Source: Podarcis pityusensis (Eukaryota). From it: DNA of 64,000 nucleotides. This document shows, piece after piece, positions 4,787 through 55,588 of this stretch (position 1 is its first letter; every line of letters starts with the position of its first letter). The position numbers and the translations under genes were made by a program. The stretch lies in NCBI GenBank assembly GCA_964106645.2, contig OZ067040.1. One strand, given 5' to 3'. A model generated the notes under the pieces. The model was given only the letters and a program-made list of their open reading frames with translations. It did no database searches and had not been told where the DNA came from.

Positions 4787-5026
4787 CAGGGGTTGGCAAG
4801 GTTTACCTTGCCTGGGCCGGTTCACTCCAGCAGAGATTCCTCTGGGCTGGAATGTGCGCACACACGAGCGAGCGCGCCTGTGATTTTCCTGCGACACAGA
4901 AGCCGGTTTAGTGCAGTGCGTGGGAGCTTGCCAAGCAGGCAGCTCGGTTTGGGGGTGGCTTATGGGCCAGTTAAACGACCCCTGTGGGCCGCTTGTTGCC
5001 CATGGACATTAGTTTGCCGACCCCTG
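4787..5026. mobile_element. hAT MITE
   Basis: TIR CAGGGGTTGGCAA/TTGCCGACCCCTG; exact 8-bp TSD TCTTAACT. Confidence 0.88.
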
Positions 5027-19271: not shown

Positions 19272-19409
19272 CAGTGTTTCCCAACCTGGGGTCACCATCT
19301 TGTTTTTTGGACTACAACTCCCATCATCCCTAGCCAGCAGGACCAGTGGTCAGGGATGATGGGAATTGTGGTCCAAAAACAGCTGGGGACCCAAGCTTGG
19401 AAAACCCTG
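19272..19409. mobile_element. short hAT-derived hairpin MITE (many related copies, e.g. ~9660, 17700, 39620, 43310, 51830, 53010, 61410)
   Basis: TIRs + exact TSD TATTAAAT; internal actacaactcccatc / gatgggaattgtggt inversion. Confidence 0.8.
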
Positions 19410-32659: not shown

Positions 32660-32873
32660 CTTATCTTCGCAGTCATAAGGGCTAGGAACTTGGTGGTTGG
32701 TTCTTGTTTTGAAATAAAAAGCCAAGGTGGTCAGGAAGCTGAATTCTGTTACATTCTGCAACATTGCTCATCTCCCAGGTTTTGCAGCCTAGTTGCAGCC
32801 CTGGCTATAATTCCATAGCAGGCCTTCCAACAATCGCGTTGGCTGATGGGCTTTCTCTTTCTTCCCTCGCCAG

Positions 32874-33118
32874 GTAAGGCAACTGCAAGAAGATGCCGCC
32901 CGCCTCCAGTCTGCTTATGCTGGAGACAAGGCCGACGATATCCAAAGGCGTGAAAATGAGGTTCTGGAAGCGTGGAAGACCTTGCTTGATGCCTGCGAGG
33001 GACGCAGGGTCAGGCTGGTAGACACCGGGGACAAATTCCGCTTCTTCAGCATGGTCCGAGATCTCATGCTTTGGATGGAGGATGTCATTCGCCAGATCGA
33101 AGCCCAAGAGAAGCCTAG
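32874..33118 (+). CDS. SPTBN1: exon 16/25 ([10 protein letters not shown]...AQEKPR)
   Basis: gccag| ... |gtaatg; 245 nt, phase 0 to 2. Confidence 0.94.
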
Positions 33119-33126
33119 GTAATGTG

Positions 33127-33562
33127 CAGGGCCGGATTTAGGTTTGATGAGGCCCTAAGCTACTGAAGGTAATGGGGCCCTTTATATTTCCAGCTGTCCT
33201 TTGTCAACAACAAATTGCCGCTGTTTTTGTGTGTTGAATATATGCTATATGGTAATTTACTGACCTAATAGGTATCTAAAGCCATTTGCACATTCAGAAT
33301 GTAGGCACCCTATATATAGAAATGAGCAAACCAGTGATATTTTAGGGAGCAGGTTAGCAGGCGGGGCCCATTACTTACATCATAGGAAGGTTACACAACA
33401 CAAAACACTGTTACTGTATGTAGGTTTTGTTTTATTTGTTTTTTATCTTACATTTTGAAAATGTACATCCAGGTGTTTTTTTCCTTTAATTTTTTTGTGG
33501 GCCCCCAAGAGAGTTGGGCCCTAAGATATAGCTTGTTTAGCTTATGTGTAAATCCGGCACTG
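33127..33562. mobile_element. hAT-like MITE family E, copy 1, at splice donor
   Basis: TIR CAGGGCCGGATTTA/TAAATCCGGCACTG; exact TSD GTAATGTG (33119-33126, 33563-33570). Confidence 0.92.
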
Positions 33563-33919
33563 GTAATGTGGAACAACAAGCCAAATGTTTAGCGCTAGGC
33601 CTCTAGCTGTGTCCGTGTGGCTGTTGCTGGTGAGGCCTACCTAGCATTCTTGAAGCATAATGTTGGGATTGAACTGGACTCAGGAGGCTTCAGTTCAGAT
33701 CCGTTCTCAGCCAGCAACACACTTGGCTGCTAACTCTCCACCTCAGTCTTCCTGTCTGTAAAATGGTTATGAGCCCCACCTACAGGTGGAGGTTGCACAC
33801 CTGAGGATCACAGGCTTACTGCCTCCATGAGAACTAGGCTTCAGTTTCTGTTGGCGGTGGGCTGCAAAAGCATTTAATAAACCGAGCGTGTGACTTTCTG
33901 AACCACCATTTCGTTTCAG

Positions 33920-34058
33920 GGATGTTTCCTCCGTAGAACTGCTGATGAACAATCACCAGGGAATCAAAGCAGAAATAGATGCCCGTAATGACAGCTTTAC
34001 AACTTGCATTGAGCTGGGCAAATCGTTGCTGGCGAGGAAACACTATGCGTCAGAAGAG
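33920..34058 (+). CDS. SPTBN1: exon 17/25 (DVSSVELLM...YASEE)
   Basis: ttcag| ... |gtacag. Confidence 0.94.
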
Positions 34059-34219
34059 GTACAGTGTGCTTGCTCTCTGCAACTATGCAGGAGTGGTGGT
34101 TGAGAAAACAACATATAAGGATCACCGTTTCAGACCTAAGGACCATCTATATTAATTGAATCTAGGTTTTGTTATGTATCTTGACTTCACCAAAGTGCTT
34201 TGCATTCCCTTCTGTTGAC

Positions 34220-34470
34220 CCTACTTAATGGACTCTATCTGTCCTGGCGATCTAATGTATCCTATTTTATTGATCTAATTTATCCTATCCCATCAATCTA
34301 ATCTGTATCCTGACTTCCTAATATAATCGATCCCTTTTTATTACTCTATCCTAGCTAATCTATTGTGTCCTGTCCTATCTAATATGTCATACCTATACTA
34401 TTTTATTCTATCTAATTAATCCTATTGTTCTATCTCTATCGCTCTGTCCCATGCTATCTAATCTAATCAA
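34220..34470. repeat. degenerate TCTA/TCCTA low-complexity tract
   Basis: Repeated atcta/tccta units. Confidence 0.6.
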
Positions 34471-34816
34471 TTTACACGCCAGCTCTGCTCATACACGCTA
34501 CTGAAGCGTTCTCATAGTTCTCCTCCCCTCCTTCTCCTCCACGGACAAAACAAACCAGAGTCTATTGTCGCATCATCCCAGACCAGGGTTCATGTTGTTT
34601 TCCCCCACCCTCCCAGCAAGCCCCCCCCCCCGCCAGACCCAATGGACACTGTCCCCCGGTGACTTCTTGCTTAAGTCTGGGTGTGAAACACAGAGCCTGC
34701 TTTTCCTAACACGATCCCAGATGCCGGATGCAGCTCTGTTAAAGTCAATATAAGACAGAAGAAGAAGAAGAAGCCTGTAGTACAATGCTAATATTCCATT
34801 CTTTTATTCCTTCCAG

Positions 34817-34901
34817 ATCAAGGAAAAGCTATTGCAGCTCACAGAGAAGAGAAAAGAAATGATTGACAAATGGGAAGACAGATGGGAGTGGCTGAGACTG
34901 A
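34817..34901 (+). CDS. SPTBN1: exon 18/25 (IKEKLLQL...WEWLRL)
   Basis: tccag| ... |gtaaga. Confidence 0.94.
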
Positions 34902-35742
34902 GTAAGACCCCCCCCTCCTTTGTCTGTCTTATTAGAGCAATGAGATCCCGCGTAGTTTTTTTAAGGCGGCAGTCTTTCCTGAGTGTTGTTGGCATTTTTT
35001 TAATACATGGCCAGGAGTGTATGCATTTGCCGTTGTTGCAAAGCTGGCGATGTGAACACAGAAGACATATGGCAAGCACAAAGACAGCCACTTAAAAGCC
35101 ACCTTTGCAATTAAGCAGTATATAAATTAATAAACAACAACAACAATAGTACAGAATGGGAGACTGAAACAAAAGGGCGTATCAGTAGGGTTAAGGGAAC
35201 CCAAAGGCTTGCAGAGATACACCCAAGAGGAAAGAACCCAAAACAGCCAGTGTGGGGTGTGGGCATGCTCAGTAGCCATGGAGTGCTGACTTAAGTGTTG
35301 GAGGAGTAGGGAAAAGTTGAAAGCCAGGGCCCTCCGTATGGTGATGAATTCCAGCTCCCATCAGCCCCAGCCAGACTGCCCACTGGTCAAGGGTGATGGG
35401 TACCCAACAACAAATGGAGAGCTATAGGTTCTCCACCCCTGGTCTAGATACATGGAGTGTCCATTCAACGCAACATGGGACCTTAGGGAGAAGGACAGAT
35501 CATTGATGATGATTTCTGGCTTCCTTTGTCCACCATGGGGATGCCCCTGGGTGAAAATATATTGGTGACACTTTAGGACATTCCCAAAGGATTGGTTTAG
35601 TACCAACCTGATGAAACAGGAGCCCCAAGAGCTAGGAGAAAGGTGCCATGTCTTTAAGAAAGTGCCTGCCTTAAGAGGCTAGGCCTATCATTGCACAGTG
35701 CTTGCCGGCCCTGAGCACCCGACGTTTCTGCCTTTGGCTTAG

Positions 35743-35939
35743 TTTTGGAAGTGCACCAGTTTTCGAGGGACGCCAGCGTCGCCGAGGCCTGGCTGCTGGG
35801 GCAGGAGCCGTACCTGTCGAGCCGCGAGATCGGGCAAAGCGTGGACGAAGTAGAGAAGCTCATCAAGAGGCACGAAGCGTTCGAAAAGTCCGCCGCAACT
35901 TGGGACGAGAGATTTTCGGCGCTTGAAAGACTTACTACG
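35743..35939 (+). CDS. SPTBN1: exon 19/25 (ILEVHQFSR...ERLTT), tetramerization region
   Basis: cttag| ... |gtgagt. Confidence 0.94.
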
Positions 35940-36256
35940 GTGAGTCGCAGGAGCCATTTCAGGGACGCATGTGCACACACACGATGGCTTTGTTCTAGCT
36001 CCAGTTGCTGGGAGTCACAGAGCTAATACGTTACAGAGCTAAATTTAGATTCTGGTAGAAATAAACGGAATGATTTCCTGTTTTCTGCGGGCGGGGGGAA
36101 TAATTCACCTTTTTTCCCCTGAGCCAATCCAATCCAACAGCTAATCAGGTTCTTGCAAGAGTGGCATTTTGAGGGAGCTAACAAGGATCTAAGATGGCCG
36201 ACGTTTCTGAGAATGGAGGGACCCTAAAGTTTCACTGTTTCTTCTCTGCTCCCCAG

Positions 36257-36360
36257 TTGGAATTGTTGGAAGTACGTCGACAGCAAGAAGAGGAAGAGAG
36301 GAAGAGGCAGCCTCCTTCTCCGGAGCCAAGCCCCAAGACCGGAGAGGAGTCTCAGCAATG
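36257..36360 (+). CDS. SPTBN1: exon 20/25 (LELLEVRRQ...EESQQW)
   Basis: cccag| ... |gtaagc; ends phase 2. Confidence 0.93.
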
Positions 36361-36368
36361 GTAAGCAG

Positions 36369-36808
36369 CAGGGCCGGATTTAGGTTTGATGAGGCCCTAA
36401 GCTACTGAAGGTAATGGGGCCCTTTACATATCCAGCTGTCCTCCTCTGTCAACAACAAATTGCCGCTGTTTTTTGTGTTGAATATATGCTATATGGTAAT
36501 TTACTGACCTAATAGGTATCTAAAGCCATTTGCACATTCAGAATGTAAGCACCGTGTATATAGAAATGAGCAAACCAGTGAGTGATATTTTAGTGAGCAG
36601 GCTAGCAGGCGGGGCCCATGACTTACATCATAGGAGCCTACGCAACACAAAACACTGTTGCTGTGTGTAGGTTTTATTTTATTTGCGTTTATCTTATGTT
36701 TTGGAAATGTACACCCAGGTGTTTTTTTTCCTTTAAATTTTTTTAGGGTCCCAAGAGAGTGCGGCCCTAAGCTATAGCTTGTTTAGCGTATACGTAAATC
36801 CGGCACTG
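36369..36808. mobile_element. hAT-like MITE family E, copy 2, at splice donor
   Basis: Same TIRs; exact TSD GTAAGCAG (36361-36368, 36809-36816). Confidence 0.92.
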
Positions 36809-37132
36809 GTAAGCAGCAGCATTGGGTAGTCCATAGAAGTTATCGGAAGCCTTTTATATCTGCCCAAGGCCTGGATTTCCTTTGGGGCAATCTTCCAAGG
36901 GCCAGAGGCAAAAGTGGGCAGTGAAATCCCACATGGCTGCCAAGGCAACCTCACAGGAAAGAAGTGTGCGCCCCCAGAATGTGTCACAGAGGCCAGGCAG
37001 CTCACCAGGGTTTTCTTCAATGTTCCTGGATGCCCATGGCAAATGGCCTGGTCTACAGTGTTGCTCCTGCGCTGCTACTTTGCAATCTCTTCCTCACTTT
37101 CTCTCTCTCTCTCTCTCTCTCTTTCCCAACAG

Positions 37133-37196
37133 GGACGGCACAAAAGGAGAGCAGGTATCCCAGAATGGTTTGCCACCAGACCAGGAATCTCCTCGG
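37133..37196 (+). CDS. SPTBN1: exon 21/25 (DGTKGEQVSQNG...ESPR), long-isoform boundary
   Basis: (CT)n tract + aacag| ... |gttagt. Confidence 0.92.
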
Positions 37197-37283
37197 GTTA
37201 GTTACCGCTCCCAAACCTACCAAAACTACAAAAACTTTAGTGGCAGATGGACGGCTAGTGACCGGCCTCGTTCTGGACATTGA
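37197..37283 (+). CDS. SPTBN1: alternative short C-terminus (betaII-Sigma2) VSYRSQTYQNYKNFSGRWTASDRPRSGH* by donor read-through
   Basis: In-frame continuation resembles the mammalian Sigma2 tail as I recall it (VSYRSQTYQNYKNFNSRRTASD...). Confidence 0.9.
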   Translation, partial: VSYRSQTYQNYKNFSGRWTASDRPRSGH

Positions 37284-37862
37284 AAGACGCAGAGCGGTTT
37301 GCAGAAGGCCACGGGCTGCTTTTTCTCCCCTGTTCCTCCCTGGTTTGCCGGCCCTCCAAATTCCCTTTACTGCTTCTCTCCCACTGCAACCACACACCCC
37401 GCCGCATTCAGCTTGTGTTCAGTTGAGTTGCCATCACACCCAGCCACTCGCTCCAGTGCCCATGTAGGCACCCTCTATTTCCTCAACTCTAAATCCTTTG
37501 AACGCCTTCAAGGCTCCCCCCACCCCACCCCGGTTGCACTGCGACTGTCTCAATGATCTTTTGTTGTGAGTTTTTCGTTTTGTTAATAGCTTTTGAGATT
37601 TCTGCCGCTAAAGCCGCCCCGTTTGTGTGAGTAATTGAGATGTAATGAGATCTCATCGTTGCGGAAGACGAGAAATAGAGACCGACAGGTACGATGTCCC
37701 TAGCTGTACTAACGGTTTTGAGCCAGGAAGCCAGCTGTGATATCGGCAAATGCCTTCAGGCGCACGATCCAGTCCTACAGACAGAAAGCAGTCGGCAGAT
37801 GTGGATATGTAAACTGGGGGTGTGGAATTCAGGGTCAGGGAGAACCATCTGCACCAAAAGAG

Positions 37863-53808: not shown

Positions 53809-55271
53809 CAGTGGTTTTTAACCAGTGTGCCGTGGCACCCTGGGGTGCCTTCAGTGATGGTCAGGAGTGCCGCAAGCAACACTGGCCTCTGTCCCTCTTT
53901 CCTTCCCTCCCTCCTCTGATGCCCTCTCGCGTGTCTGCCTCCCAAAGGCTTGTGTGGCTGTTTGCTGCAGCAGCCCGGGCTACCAGCTCCCCAGGTGAAT
54001 GGTGCCTCTGGGACTGGCCAGGGGGCGCTGGTTGCCAGGAGCTGAGGCAGCCTTAGAGTAAACAGGCAAGCGGGTGAGGGAGCCCAGATGGTCAGTCCAC
54101 CAGCACTTGCTGTTGGAAATGGACAGACAAGTGGGAGGCCGGGCAGGCAGGCACTGGCCTTTGTTTTGCTTGCTGTGTGCGAGGCCTGCCTGACAGCATA
54201 GTGCCCGGTGCTGAAGGGGAACCTTTCCACCATGCAAGCCCAGCAGCGCCCACTGCTGCTGCCCAAAGTAAGGTGCCGGCCTCTCGTTCTCCTTTGGCCA
54301 GTCTCCGTTGGGCCACTAAGGCTGGGGCCATCCTCTTCCCAGGCCACTGTGAAGAGACAACTCTCTTTGGGGTGGGGTGGCTCAGAGACCAGTGGCGGCA
54401 GCAGCGGCTGCCCAGAGGACCCCCAAGGAAAGGAGAGGAGGCTGAGGGAACGCTCCACAAGAGAGGGTGTTCGAAAAAGGGTGAGAGGCTGTCAGCTCTG
54501 CAGGCAAGGGGTGATGTAACTGGGCTCCTGAGTCCCACAGGGGTGCGGCAGGAACATAGTACCCCCTGGCCAGTCCCAGAGGCACTTAGGACCCTCGTAC
54601 CTACAGGACCGCCTCTCCTGGTATGTCCCACGGAGGACCTTACGGTCTTCAAATAAAAACATCTTGGAGGTCCCAGGCCACAGGGAGGTTAGGCTGGCCT
54701 CAACCAGAGCCAGGGCTTTTTCGGCCGTGGCCCCGATCTGGTGGAACACTCTGTCACAAAAGACTAGGGCCCTGGAGGACTTGACATCTTTCCGCAGGGC
54801 CTGCAAGACAGAGCTGTTCCACCAGGTCTTTGGCCAGGGCACAGCCTGACCCCCTCCTTCGGTAATCCTCACAGAACTCTAGCCCAATGGCTGCCATTAA
54901 TTTGATTTTGAATTGATTTTAGAATGAATTGATTTTAGAATACATTTCAATTACAGTGGTACCTTGGGTTAAGCACTTAATTCGTTCCGGAGGTCTGTTC
55001 TTAACCTGAAACTGTACTTAACCTGAAGCACCACTTTAGCTAACGGGGCCTCCTGCTGCTGCTGCGCCGCCGCCGCACGATTTCTGTTCTCATCCTGAAG
55101 CAAAGTTCTTAACCTGAGGTACTATTTCTGGGTTAGCGGAGTCTGTAACCTGAAGCGTACGTAACCCGAGGTACCACTGTAATTGATTTTATGTAAACTG
55201 TGTTACTTTTATTGTGGTTAGCCGCTCTGAGCCTGGCTTCGGCTGGGGAGGGCAGGATATAAATTTAAAAA

Positions 55272-55304
<33 letters not shown>

Positions 55305-55588
55305 GTACAGTGGTACCTCTGTTTTCGAACGTAAGCTGTTCTGGAAGACTGTTCGACTTCCGAAACTTTCGAAAAGTGAGGCGCAAAGGGCAGCCTGCAA
55401 ATTGAGTAGAGAAAATTGAAAAAAAAAAAAAAAAAAAACCTCAGCAAAAGCCATTGACAGAATGCATTTAGTTCCGGGTTTTTTGGCGTTTGAAAACTGA
55501 AACGTTCAGCAACGGAGACTTTCGAAAATTGAGGTACCACTGTAGTTGGTTACGGGAACCATGGGCACAAAAAGGTTGAGAAGCTCTG
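53809..55588. mobile_element. hAT element hosting nested L2 and two MITEs
   Basis: Ends cagtggtttttaacc / ggttgagaagctctg; exact TSD CCTTAAGC (53801-53808, 55589-55596). Confidence 0.75.
55308..55542. mobile_element. Tc1/mariner-type MITE
   Basis: TA|CAGTGGTACCTC...GAGGTACCACTG|TA. Confidence 0.82.

What the first reader, a model, noticed from the sequence alone, without database searches (positions are those of the whole stretch)
33119..36816. One hAT-like MITE family inserted twice exactly at 5' splice donors, duplicating the donor as its TSD
Seen: two ~440-bp copies (33127-33562, 36369-36808) with the same orientation and TIR CAG(G/T)GCCGGATTTA. In both, the 8-bp TSD is exactly intron nucleotides +1 to +8 (GTAATGTG after the exon ending 33118; GTAAGCAG after the exon ending 36360). 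Flanks differ and the copies have diverged, so they look like independent insertions rather than a local duplication. I saw no other copy of this family in the window. The other hAT TSDs here (TCTTAACT, TATTAAAT, CCTTAAGC, ttctagaa) are AT-centred and unrelated to splice sites. Inference: with only about 25 donors in 64 kb, two of two exact hits suggest a transposase that targets exon-intron junctions, either by a G|GTAA sequence preference or by tethering to splicing/chromatin marks. Such an insertion would be tolerated because the proximal donor is preserved.
Basis: partly seen in the sequence, partly recalled or inferred. Interest (0 to 1): 0.9.

Follow-up and report, generated by a model that had tools for sequence, protein, structure and literature searches.

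The report
Transposon twice duplicating spectrin splice donors
Two copies of a small cut-and-paste transposon sit in a wall-lizard beta-spectrin gene exactly on the first eight bases of two old introns; this is real and hard to put down to chance, but whether the element seeks out splice sites could not be tested here.

Summary
Two 436/440-bp hAT-type MITEs (33127-33562, 36369-36808) share orientation and TIRs (CAGGGCCGGATTTA / CAGTGCCGGATTTA) and are 90% identical. Each is flanked by a perfect 8-bp duplication that is exactly intron +1..+8 of a beta-spectrin (SPTBN1-like) exon: GTAATGTG after 33118 and GTAAGCAG after 36360. Contigs from other, more distant species carry the same exon ends with uninterrupted introns, so both elements entered old donors of short introns (357 and 324 bp before insertion). 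No third copy is in the window.

With 24 mapped donors, two of two hits has p about 1.5e-7 under uniform insertion. It is 8e-4 if the element needs GTAA and 8e-3 if it needs GGTAA.

My best reading (about 0.45) is a hAT family whose target motif starts G|GTAA-like; hobo's motif starts GT. Such a motif would lock the 8-bp cut onto donors, perhaps helped by local reinsertion. True splice-junction tethering gets about 0.15 and coincidence about 0.2.

The decisive genome-wide target logo could not be made. The scan has a similar, unchecked note on other DNA of this genome (s1-733823, a hAT MITE duplicating an MPRIP donor).

The parts
32874..33118 (+). Beta-spectrin exon A ([12 protein letters not shown]...RQIEAQEKP, last codon split AG|G)
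   Evidence: The open frame and acceptor ccag|GT are seen. tblastn with beta-spectrin P0004 supports it. ORFs of other species all end at ...EKPR.
33119..33126 (+). Proximal TSD copy GTAATGTG, which is intron +1..+8 and the presumed working donor
   Evidence: Searches show the sequence. Orthologous empty sites begin GTAATGGG, GTAAAGTG or GTAATATG right after the same exon end.
33127..33562 (+). MITE copy 1, 436 bp, with TIRs CAGGGCCGGATTTA ... TAAATCCGGCACTG
   Evidence: It has no long ORF and no Rfam match.
33563..33570 (+). Distal TSD copy GTAATGTG, a duplicated donor preceded by the element end CTG
   Evidence: The sequence that follows (GAACAACAAG) continues the orthologous intron of L005 (GACAACCAG).
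33920..34058 (+). Exon B (G|[22 protein letters not shown]...); the intron from 33119 to 33919 is 801 bp, 357 bp without the insertion
   Evidence: It is conserved in L002 and L006-8.
36257..36360 (+). Exon E (LELLEVRRQQEEEERKR...ESQQ, last codon split TG|G)
   Evidence: The alignment to L002/L003 shows the same exon end CAGCAATG|GT.
36361..36368 (+). Proximal TSD copy GTAAGCAG, which is intron +1..+8 and the presumed working donor
   Evidence: The orthologous site reads GTGAGCTG.
36369..36808 (+). MITE copy 2, 440 bp, with the same TIRs and orientation as copy 1
36809..36816 (+). Distal TSD copy GTAAGCAG, a duplicated donor
37133..37196 (+). Exon F (DGTKGEQVSQNGLPPDQESPR, donor CGG|GTTAGT); the intron from 36361 to 37132 is 772 bp, 324 bp without the insertion
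   Evidence: One search gives the frame and splice sites. The block is 86% identical in L002/L003.

Best explanation
Two independent cut-and-paste insertions of one non-autonomous hAT (Ac/hobo-like) MITE family entered a wall-lizard beta-spectrin (SPTBN1-like) gene. Each time the transposase made its 8-bp staggered cut across the first eight bases of an existing, old, short intron. Gap repair then duplicated GTAATGTG or GTAAGCAG. One donor copy still abuts the exon, with -3..+8 unchanged, and should keep working. A second donor copy lies about 440 bp further in.

I propose that both landed there because this family's target motif begins with a G|GTAA-like half-site, so the cut locks in register with the intron's GT. 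Exon-intron junctions are the most regular source of that motif in transcribed DNA. Reinsertion near the donor site (hAT 'local hopping') may explain why the only two copies in 64 kb lie 3.2 kb apart in one gene.

What is shown: the elements, their hAT hallmarks, the TSDs, the exon ends, the old empty sites, and the poor fit of uniform insertion. What is inferred: the sequence preference, the local hop, and that the proximal donor is the one used.
For: - The elements, TIRs and perfect 8-bp TSDs are in the sequence.
- The exon ends and the age of the introns are confirmed by uninterrupted orthologous sites in L002-L008.
- There are 24 donors in 63.1 kb of pre-insertion sequence. Under uniform insertion p squared is 1.45e-7. 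It rises to 8e-4, 8e-3 and 0.028 for models requiring GTAA, GGTAA and GGTAANNNG. A sequence preference therefore removes four to five orders of magnitude of surprise.
- The natural target motif of the hAT element hobo from 1,198 insertions is GTNCGNAC, and hAT/P motifs span about 14 bp (PMC3276498; PMC3706591). A GT-first half-site is thus a known hAT property.
- Other hAT families in this window use different, TA-centred targets, so target choice differs between hAT families.
- The same genome has another first-reader note of a hAT MITE duplicating a donor (s1-733823). I could not check it.
Against: - There are only two sites.
- Everything the two targets share (G at -1, GTAA) is also what donors share, so nothing shows a preference independent of donor status.
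- Even under a GGTAA-only model, two of two has p about 0.008. The other 72 of the 79 GGTAA sites in the window are not donors, and none of them was hit.
- The two donors are not the best consensus matches in the gene. They score 2.5 and 4.9 bits on an approximate donor matrix, against up to 8.7 for other donors.
- Known hAT target motifs are weak and palindromic. These two TSDs are not palindromic: they end TG and AG, not AC.
- Both copies have the same orientation relative to transcription. A symmetric sequence preference does not predict that, although the chance of it is 0.5.
Confidence: 0.45

Rival explanations
1. True splice-junction targeting. The transposase, or a host partner it binds, is guided to 5' splice sites of transcribed genes by something more than the DNA motif, such as contact with splicing or transcription machinery or exon-edge chromatin. 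Integration then falls at intron +1..+8 in one orientation.
For: Two of two copies sit at donors, in the same orientation, and none of the 72 non-donor GGTAA sites was hit. Sequence-only models still give p between 8e-4 and 0.03. Fixed TEs are normally depleted within 50-100 bp of exons (PMC3088655), so finding both copies 8 bp from an exon goes against the usual pattern. A further donor-duplicating hAT MITE is noted elsewhere in this genome (s1-733823, unchecked).
Against: No DNA transposon is known to do this. Single-base precision is hard to get from chromatin or machinery contacts without reading the DNA. There are two data points, chosen by a reader because they looked striking. Nothing in the 440-bp element, which has no ORF, bears on the transposase, and the autonomous partner was not found.
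Confidence: 0.15
2. Coincidence. The family has no preference beyond the general hAT liking for T (or GT) at the start of the TSD. Two old insertions happened to land on donors, and a reader scanning many windows picked them out.
For: The scan covers 654 windows of this genome and some 250,000 windows in all, so rare coincidences will be seen somewhere. A GT-first bias as in hobo locks the register once an insertion falls near a donor. That raises the per-insertion chance from about 4e-4 to a few in a thousand.
Against: Only five or six hAT elements with recognisable TSDs are in the window. The chance of at least two of them at intron +1 is about 2e-6 per window, or about 1e-3 over the 654 windows (my arithmetic). 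Both hits also belong to one family that has no other copy here.
Confidence: 0.2
3. Selection after random insertion. Insertions next to the donor were kept because the duplicated distal donor or the element does something useful, for example regulated unproductive splicing of spectrin. Copies elsewhere in the gene were lost.
For: Use of the distal donors would read straight into a stop (AGG TAA and TGG TAA), so a poison isoform is conceivable. The scan has a separate note on this (s1-736025).
Against: It needs two rare events each followed by positive selection. Intronic insertions elsewhere are near-neutral and would not be purged, yet none is present. No expression data could be obtained. 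The element's RNA fold is unremarkable (z -1.4).
Confidence: 0.05

Closest known systems
hAT superfamily MITEs and their Ac/hobo-type autonomous elements
   Same: They share the 8-bp TSD, short TIRs starting CAG(G/T)G (YARNG), small size with no ORF, and GGCCC-type subterminal repeats. hobo's natural target motif GTNCGNAC also starts with GT (PMC3276498).
   Different: Known hAT motifs are weak and palindromic and show no link to gene structure. Here both TSDs are non-palindromic, start GTAA and coincide with intron +1..+8.
Introners (transposons that create introns, with the TSD supplying a splice site)
   Same: A DNA transposon's target duplication ends up providing a splice-site sequence (10.1101/2022.06.06.494994 and PMC12130899, listed).
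   Different: Introners insert into exons and become the whole new intron. Here the introns pre-exist in other species, the element fills only about 55% of each intron, and its ends (CA...TG) are not splice sites.
Dada transposons (sequence-specific DNA transposons in U6/U1 snRNA and tRNA genes)
   Same: They are a precedent for a eukaryotic DDE cut-and-paste element with a strict, oriented, single-base target choice. Their transposase is distantly related to hAT/P/MuDR transposases (PMC3706591).
   Different: Dada makes 6-7-bp TSDs, lacks TIRs and targets multicopy RNA genes, not splice donors.
[D1,2] stwintrons of Hypoxylaceae fungi
   Same: They are sequence-similar mobile intervening sequences found nested inside 5' donors (PMC12403724).
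   Different: They are spliceosomal introns that split the donor between +1 and +2, and they have no TIRs or TSDs. The lizard element lies between +8 and +9 and is a DNA transposon.
Exon-proximal 'underrepresentation zones' for TEs in mammalian introns
   Same: They give the baseline expectation for TEs near exons (PMC3088655).
   Different: DNA transposons are depleted within 50-100 bp of exons there. Here both copies lie 8 bp from the exon.

Membership tests
hAT superfamily (non-autonomous member) | 8-bp target site duplication | tested here: met
   GTAATGTG and GTAAGCAG are each perfectly repeated at both ends. Orthologous empty sites carry a single copy.
hAT superfamily (non-autonomous member) | Short TIRs beginning 5'-YARNG | tested here: met
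   CAGGGCCGGATTTA and CAGTGCCGGATTTA match at 13 of 14 positions.
hAT superfamily (non-autonomous member) | Mobilised by a transposase with hAT dimerisation and BED domains that shares the TIRs | not testable with these tools
   No autonomous partner is in the window, and no lizard genome could be searched.
hAT superfamily (non-autonomous member) | Ac-type target consensus nTnnnnAn | tested here: inconclusive
   T is at position 2 in both TSDs. A is at position 7 only in GTAAGCAG.
MITE | Under about 800 bp, no coding capacity, several homogeneous copies | tested here: met
   The copies are 436 and 440 bp. The longest ORFs inside the element are 45-49 aa. Two copies are 90% identical. The genome-wide copy number is unknown.
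Introner | Insertion into an exon creates a new intron made of the element, with splice sites from the element ends or TSD | tested here: not met
   The introns exist, without the element, at the same exon ends in L002-L008. The element occupies 436 of 801 bp and 440 of 772 bp of its intron.
Dada-type target-specific DNA transposon | 6-7-bp TSD, no TIRs, one fixed site in a multicopy small-RNA gene | tested here: not met
   The TSD is 8 bp, TIRs are present, the targets are in a protein-coding gene, and no Rfam RNA lies in 32800-37300.
   Only two copies were available.

The most novel reading that the evidence does not exclude
This lizard hAT family integrates preferentially, and in one orientation, into the first eight bases of introns of transcribed genes. 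It would recognise 5' splice sites either through an unusually long, asymmetric donor-like target motif that evolved as a safe haven, or through contact with the splicing or transcription machinery. It would be the first splice-donor-seeking DNA transposon in a vertebrate and a systematic source of duplicated donors.
Probability: 0.2. Interest if true: 0.85.

Novelty: new member of a known kind. Interest (0 to 1): 0.5.

Why it matters
If the family really prefers donors, it would show that a cut-and-paste transposon can use the one intronic position next to an exon where an 8-bp duplication leaves the splice signal intact. Such a family would add a second, in-register donor to many genes at once, which is raw material for alternative or poison isoforms. 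It would also sit between ordinary intronic TEs and the introners that create introns in other eukaryotes. A transposase with a long oriented target motif would interest people who build targeted gene-delivery tools. If the genome-wide test is negative, this is simply two ordinary hAT MITE insertions in a striking place.

Tried and rejected
- **Sequencing runs.** There is therefore no RNA evidence on which donor is used, no copy-number estimate and no read-based target logo.
- **Protein search from inside the element.** The longest open frame in the element (33386-33589) runs through the 3' TIR into the TSD. I searched it in the hope of recovering ORFs called on other copies. No candidate was found.
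- **DNA pattern scans.** Scans for the 5' end, and for both ends with a gap, found nothing in metagenome contigs or viral contigs. Two calls were formatting slips (34, 35).
- **Exact look-ups of window ORFs.** None is on record, so this species seems not to be in that collection. One of these queries began with a GTG codon and may have failed for that reason alone.
- **TIR strings in paper full text.** Only chance primer matches turned up. Literature searches for a donor-preferring transposon found none.
- **Rfam and RNA fold.** There is no Rfam match in 32800-37300. The RNA fold of copy 1 is not unusual (z -1.44).
- **Rejected: local segmental duplication or gene conversion between the two sites.** Each copy has its own TSD on both sides and its own flanks.
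- **Rejected: introner or new-intron origin.** The introns are old.
- **Rejected: shifted exon end.** The orthologues end at the same base.
- **Noted but not pursued.** A 9-bp TSD is possible in principle, because G precedes both TSD copies. The symmetric CAG...CTG ends argue for 8 bp.
Full report
**What is there**

Reading the two places shows the same anatomy twice. An open spectrin coding stretch ends, and eight bases starting with GT follow. Then comes an element that starts CAGGGCCGGATTTA and ends TAAATCCGGCACTG, and then the same eight bases again. An unbiased scan of the window for 8-bp direct repeats that bracket inverted ends returns exactly these two elements plus one unrelated hAT MITE.

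The elements are 33127-33562 (436 bp, TSD GTAATGTG) and 36369-36808 (440 bp, TSD GTAAGCAG). They lie in the same orientation. They are 90.3% identical with gaps counted; K2P is 0.089, and only 3 of 21 transitions are in CpG context. BLASTN with word size 7 finds no other copy or fragment in the 64 kb. The 8-bp TSD, the CAG(G/T)G ends, the small size and the lack of ORFs make this a non-autonomous hAT element. There is no Rfam match, and the RNA fold is unremarkable.

**The gene and the donors**

The plus strand carries the 3' two-thirds of a beta-spectrin gene.
- A 267-residue exon product finds spectrins in the representative library.
- A 2355-residue beta-spectrin (P0004) aligns colinearly along the window from 1.3 to 55.9 kb.
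- ORFs of other species over exon A carry Pfam Spectrin, and two are named 'spectrin beta' by their source.
- The last exon ends ...RFSLFGKKK. From my own knowledge that is how SPTBN1 ends, so I call the gene SPTBN1-like.

I mapped 24 donors by inspecting HSP ends.
- Exon A is 32874-33118 and continues in exon B at 33920 ([14 protein letters not shown]).
- Exon E is 36257-36360 and continues in a small exon F at 37133-37196 (DGTKGEQVSQNGLPPDQESPR).
- The two hosts are therefore short introns: 801 and 772 bp now, 357 and 324 bp before the insertions.

**Empty sites**

The protein collection holds ORFs called on Logan contigs of other reptile-like species (exon nucleotide identity 83-88%). I fetched contigs through them.

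For copy 1, the exon ends at the same base in all of them and the intron runs on without the element:
- L005: AAG|GTAATGGGGACAACCAG
- L004: AAG|GTAAAGTGGACATT
- L006-8: AAG|GTAATATGAAAT

Joining one TSD copy of the wall lizard to its distal flank gives TAG|GTAATGTGGAACAACAAG. This aligns straight across the insertion point with L005.

For copy 2, L002 and L003 read CAGCAATG|GTGAGCTGGAC.

Both donors and both introns are therefore old. The elements entered between +8 and +9 and duplicated +1..+8. None of the 37 kb of fetched orthologous DNA contains the family.

**Is it more than chance?**

On the window with the insertions removed (63,108 bp), a uniform insertion hits a donor in register with p = 3.8e-4. 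Two of two gives 1.45e-7.

Only five or six hAT elements with readable TSDs are in the window. By my arithmetic, the chance of at least two of them at intron +1 is about 2e-6 per window and about 1e-3 over the 654 windows of this genome read so far. Pure coincidence is therefore unlikely, though not absurd for a scan of some 250,000 windows.

If the element needs a motif, the numbers change:
- GTAA occurs 351 times on both strands and 10 of those sites are donors, so p squared is 8e-4.
- GGTAA occurs 79 times with 7 donors, so p squared is 8e-3.
- GGTAANNNG occurs 30 times with 5 donors, so p squared is 0.028. This motif is fitted to the two sites.
- An approximate donor matrix (frequencies from memory) at the score of the weaker site gives 221 sites with 18 donors, so p squared is 7e-3.

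**What it most likely is**

A target-sequence preference removes most of the surprise and has precedent. The natural target motif of hobo, from about 1,200 insertions, is GTNCGNAC, and hAT and P motifs span about 14 bp (PMC3276498; also stated in PMC3706591). A family whose half-site is G|GTAA-like would lock its 8-bp cut onto intron +1 whenever it lands at a donor.

The other hAT families in the same window use TA-centred palindromes (TCTTAACT, TATTAAAT, CCTTAAGC), so target choice clearly differs between families.

hAT elements are known, from established knowledge of Ac/Ds, to reinsert near their donor site. That would explain two copies 3.2 kb apart in one gene and none elsewhere in 64 kb.

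The insertion is tolerable because the donor signal (-3..+6) is unchanged through +8. This is an inference, since I have no RNA data. Use of the distal donor would read AGG TAA or TGG TAA, an immediate stop.

**Why the question stays open**

What the two targets share (G at -1, GTAA) is just what donors share, so nothing separates 'likes the motif' from 'likes donors'.
- Sequence-only models still leave p around 0.001-0.03.
- No non-donor GGTAA site was hit.
- The two donors are only middling matches to the consensus (2.5 and 4.9 bits, against up to 8.7 elsewhere).
- The TSDs are not palindromic, unlike known hAT motifs.
- Both copies point the same way.
- Fixed TEs are normally depleted within 50-100 bp of exons (PMC3088655).

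These points keep a real junction-targeting mechanism alive at about 0.15. Another first-reader note in this genome reports a hAT MITE that duplicated an MPRIP donor (s1-733823). I could not see its sequence, and by itself one such event is about what chance predicts over 42 Mb.

**What could not be done**

The decisive test is a genome-wide target logo with motif-matched controls. A protein search with an open frame that runs out of the element through its TIR found nothing. DNA pattern scans of metagenome and viral contigs were empty. The window's own ORFs are not on record. No paper holds the TIR sequence.

**Comparison with known systems**

The element passes the structural tests for a hAT MITE.
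- It is not an introner: the introns pre-exist and the element is only part of each.
- It is not Dada-like: Dada makes a 6-7-bp TSD, has no TIRs and targets RNA genes.
- It is not a stwintron: those have no TIR or TSD and split the donor at +1/+2.

I file it as a new member of a known kind. Its placement is striking and cheaply testable, and if general it would make it a new variant.

Noticed in passing
window 33166-33179 and 33249-33259 (same motifs in copy 2): The MITE itself carries two donor-like motifs near its 5' end, AAGGTAATGGGGCC and ATGGTAATTTA. The first is almost identical to the empty target site of copy 1 as seen in another species (L005: AAGGTAATGGGGAC). The second shares ATGGTAA with target 2. 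This could be chance (about 0.2 GGTAAT sites expected per element), or a hint that the transposase binds GGTAAT-like DNA both in the element and in the target.
   Followed up: partly
window 33366-33377 against 33169-33180: There is an internal long-range inverted repeat, GTAATGGGGCCC paired with GGGGCCCATTAC. GGCCC recurs five times near the ends (GAGGCCCTAAG, GGGGCCCTTT, GGGGCCCATT, GGGCCCCCAAG, GGGCCCTAAG). These are likely subterminal transposase-binding repeats.
   Followed up: no
window 32870-32879: Exon A begins CAG|GTAAGG. The acceptor is directly followed by a strong donor-like sequence, the layout of a recursive splice site. It is a top-scoring GGTAAG site that carries no insertion, as expected because an insertion there would break the exon.
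   Followed up: no
window 4787-5026, 19272-19409, 53809-55588: Three other hAT MITEs have Charlie-like TIRs (CAGGGGTTGGCAAG, CAGTGTTTCCCAACC, CAGTGGTTTTTAACC) and TA-centred TSDs (TCTTAACT, TATTAAAT, CCTTAAGC). All three are deep in introns or in the 3' region.
   Followed up: partly
window 37133-37196 with conserved flanks 37117-37278: The small exon F and about 80 bp of intron after it are 86% identical to a distant species (L002/L003). A second conserved non-coding block lies at 37565-37713 (75%). The ORF hits P0151-P0156 come from this region, not from a gene.
   Followed up: partly
window 33119-33570: TSD plus MITE copy 1 is 444 nt, a multiple of three, whereas copy 2 adds 448 nt. Both would give an immediate in-frame stop if the distal donor were used, so any such isoform should be a nonsense-mediated decay (NMD) target.
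   Followed up: no
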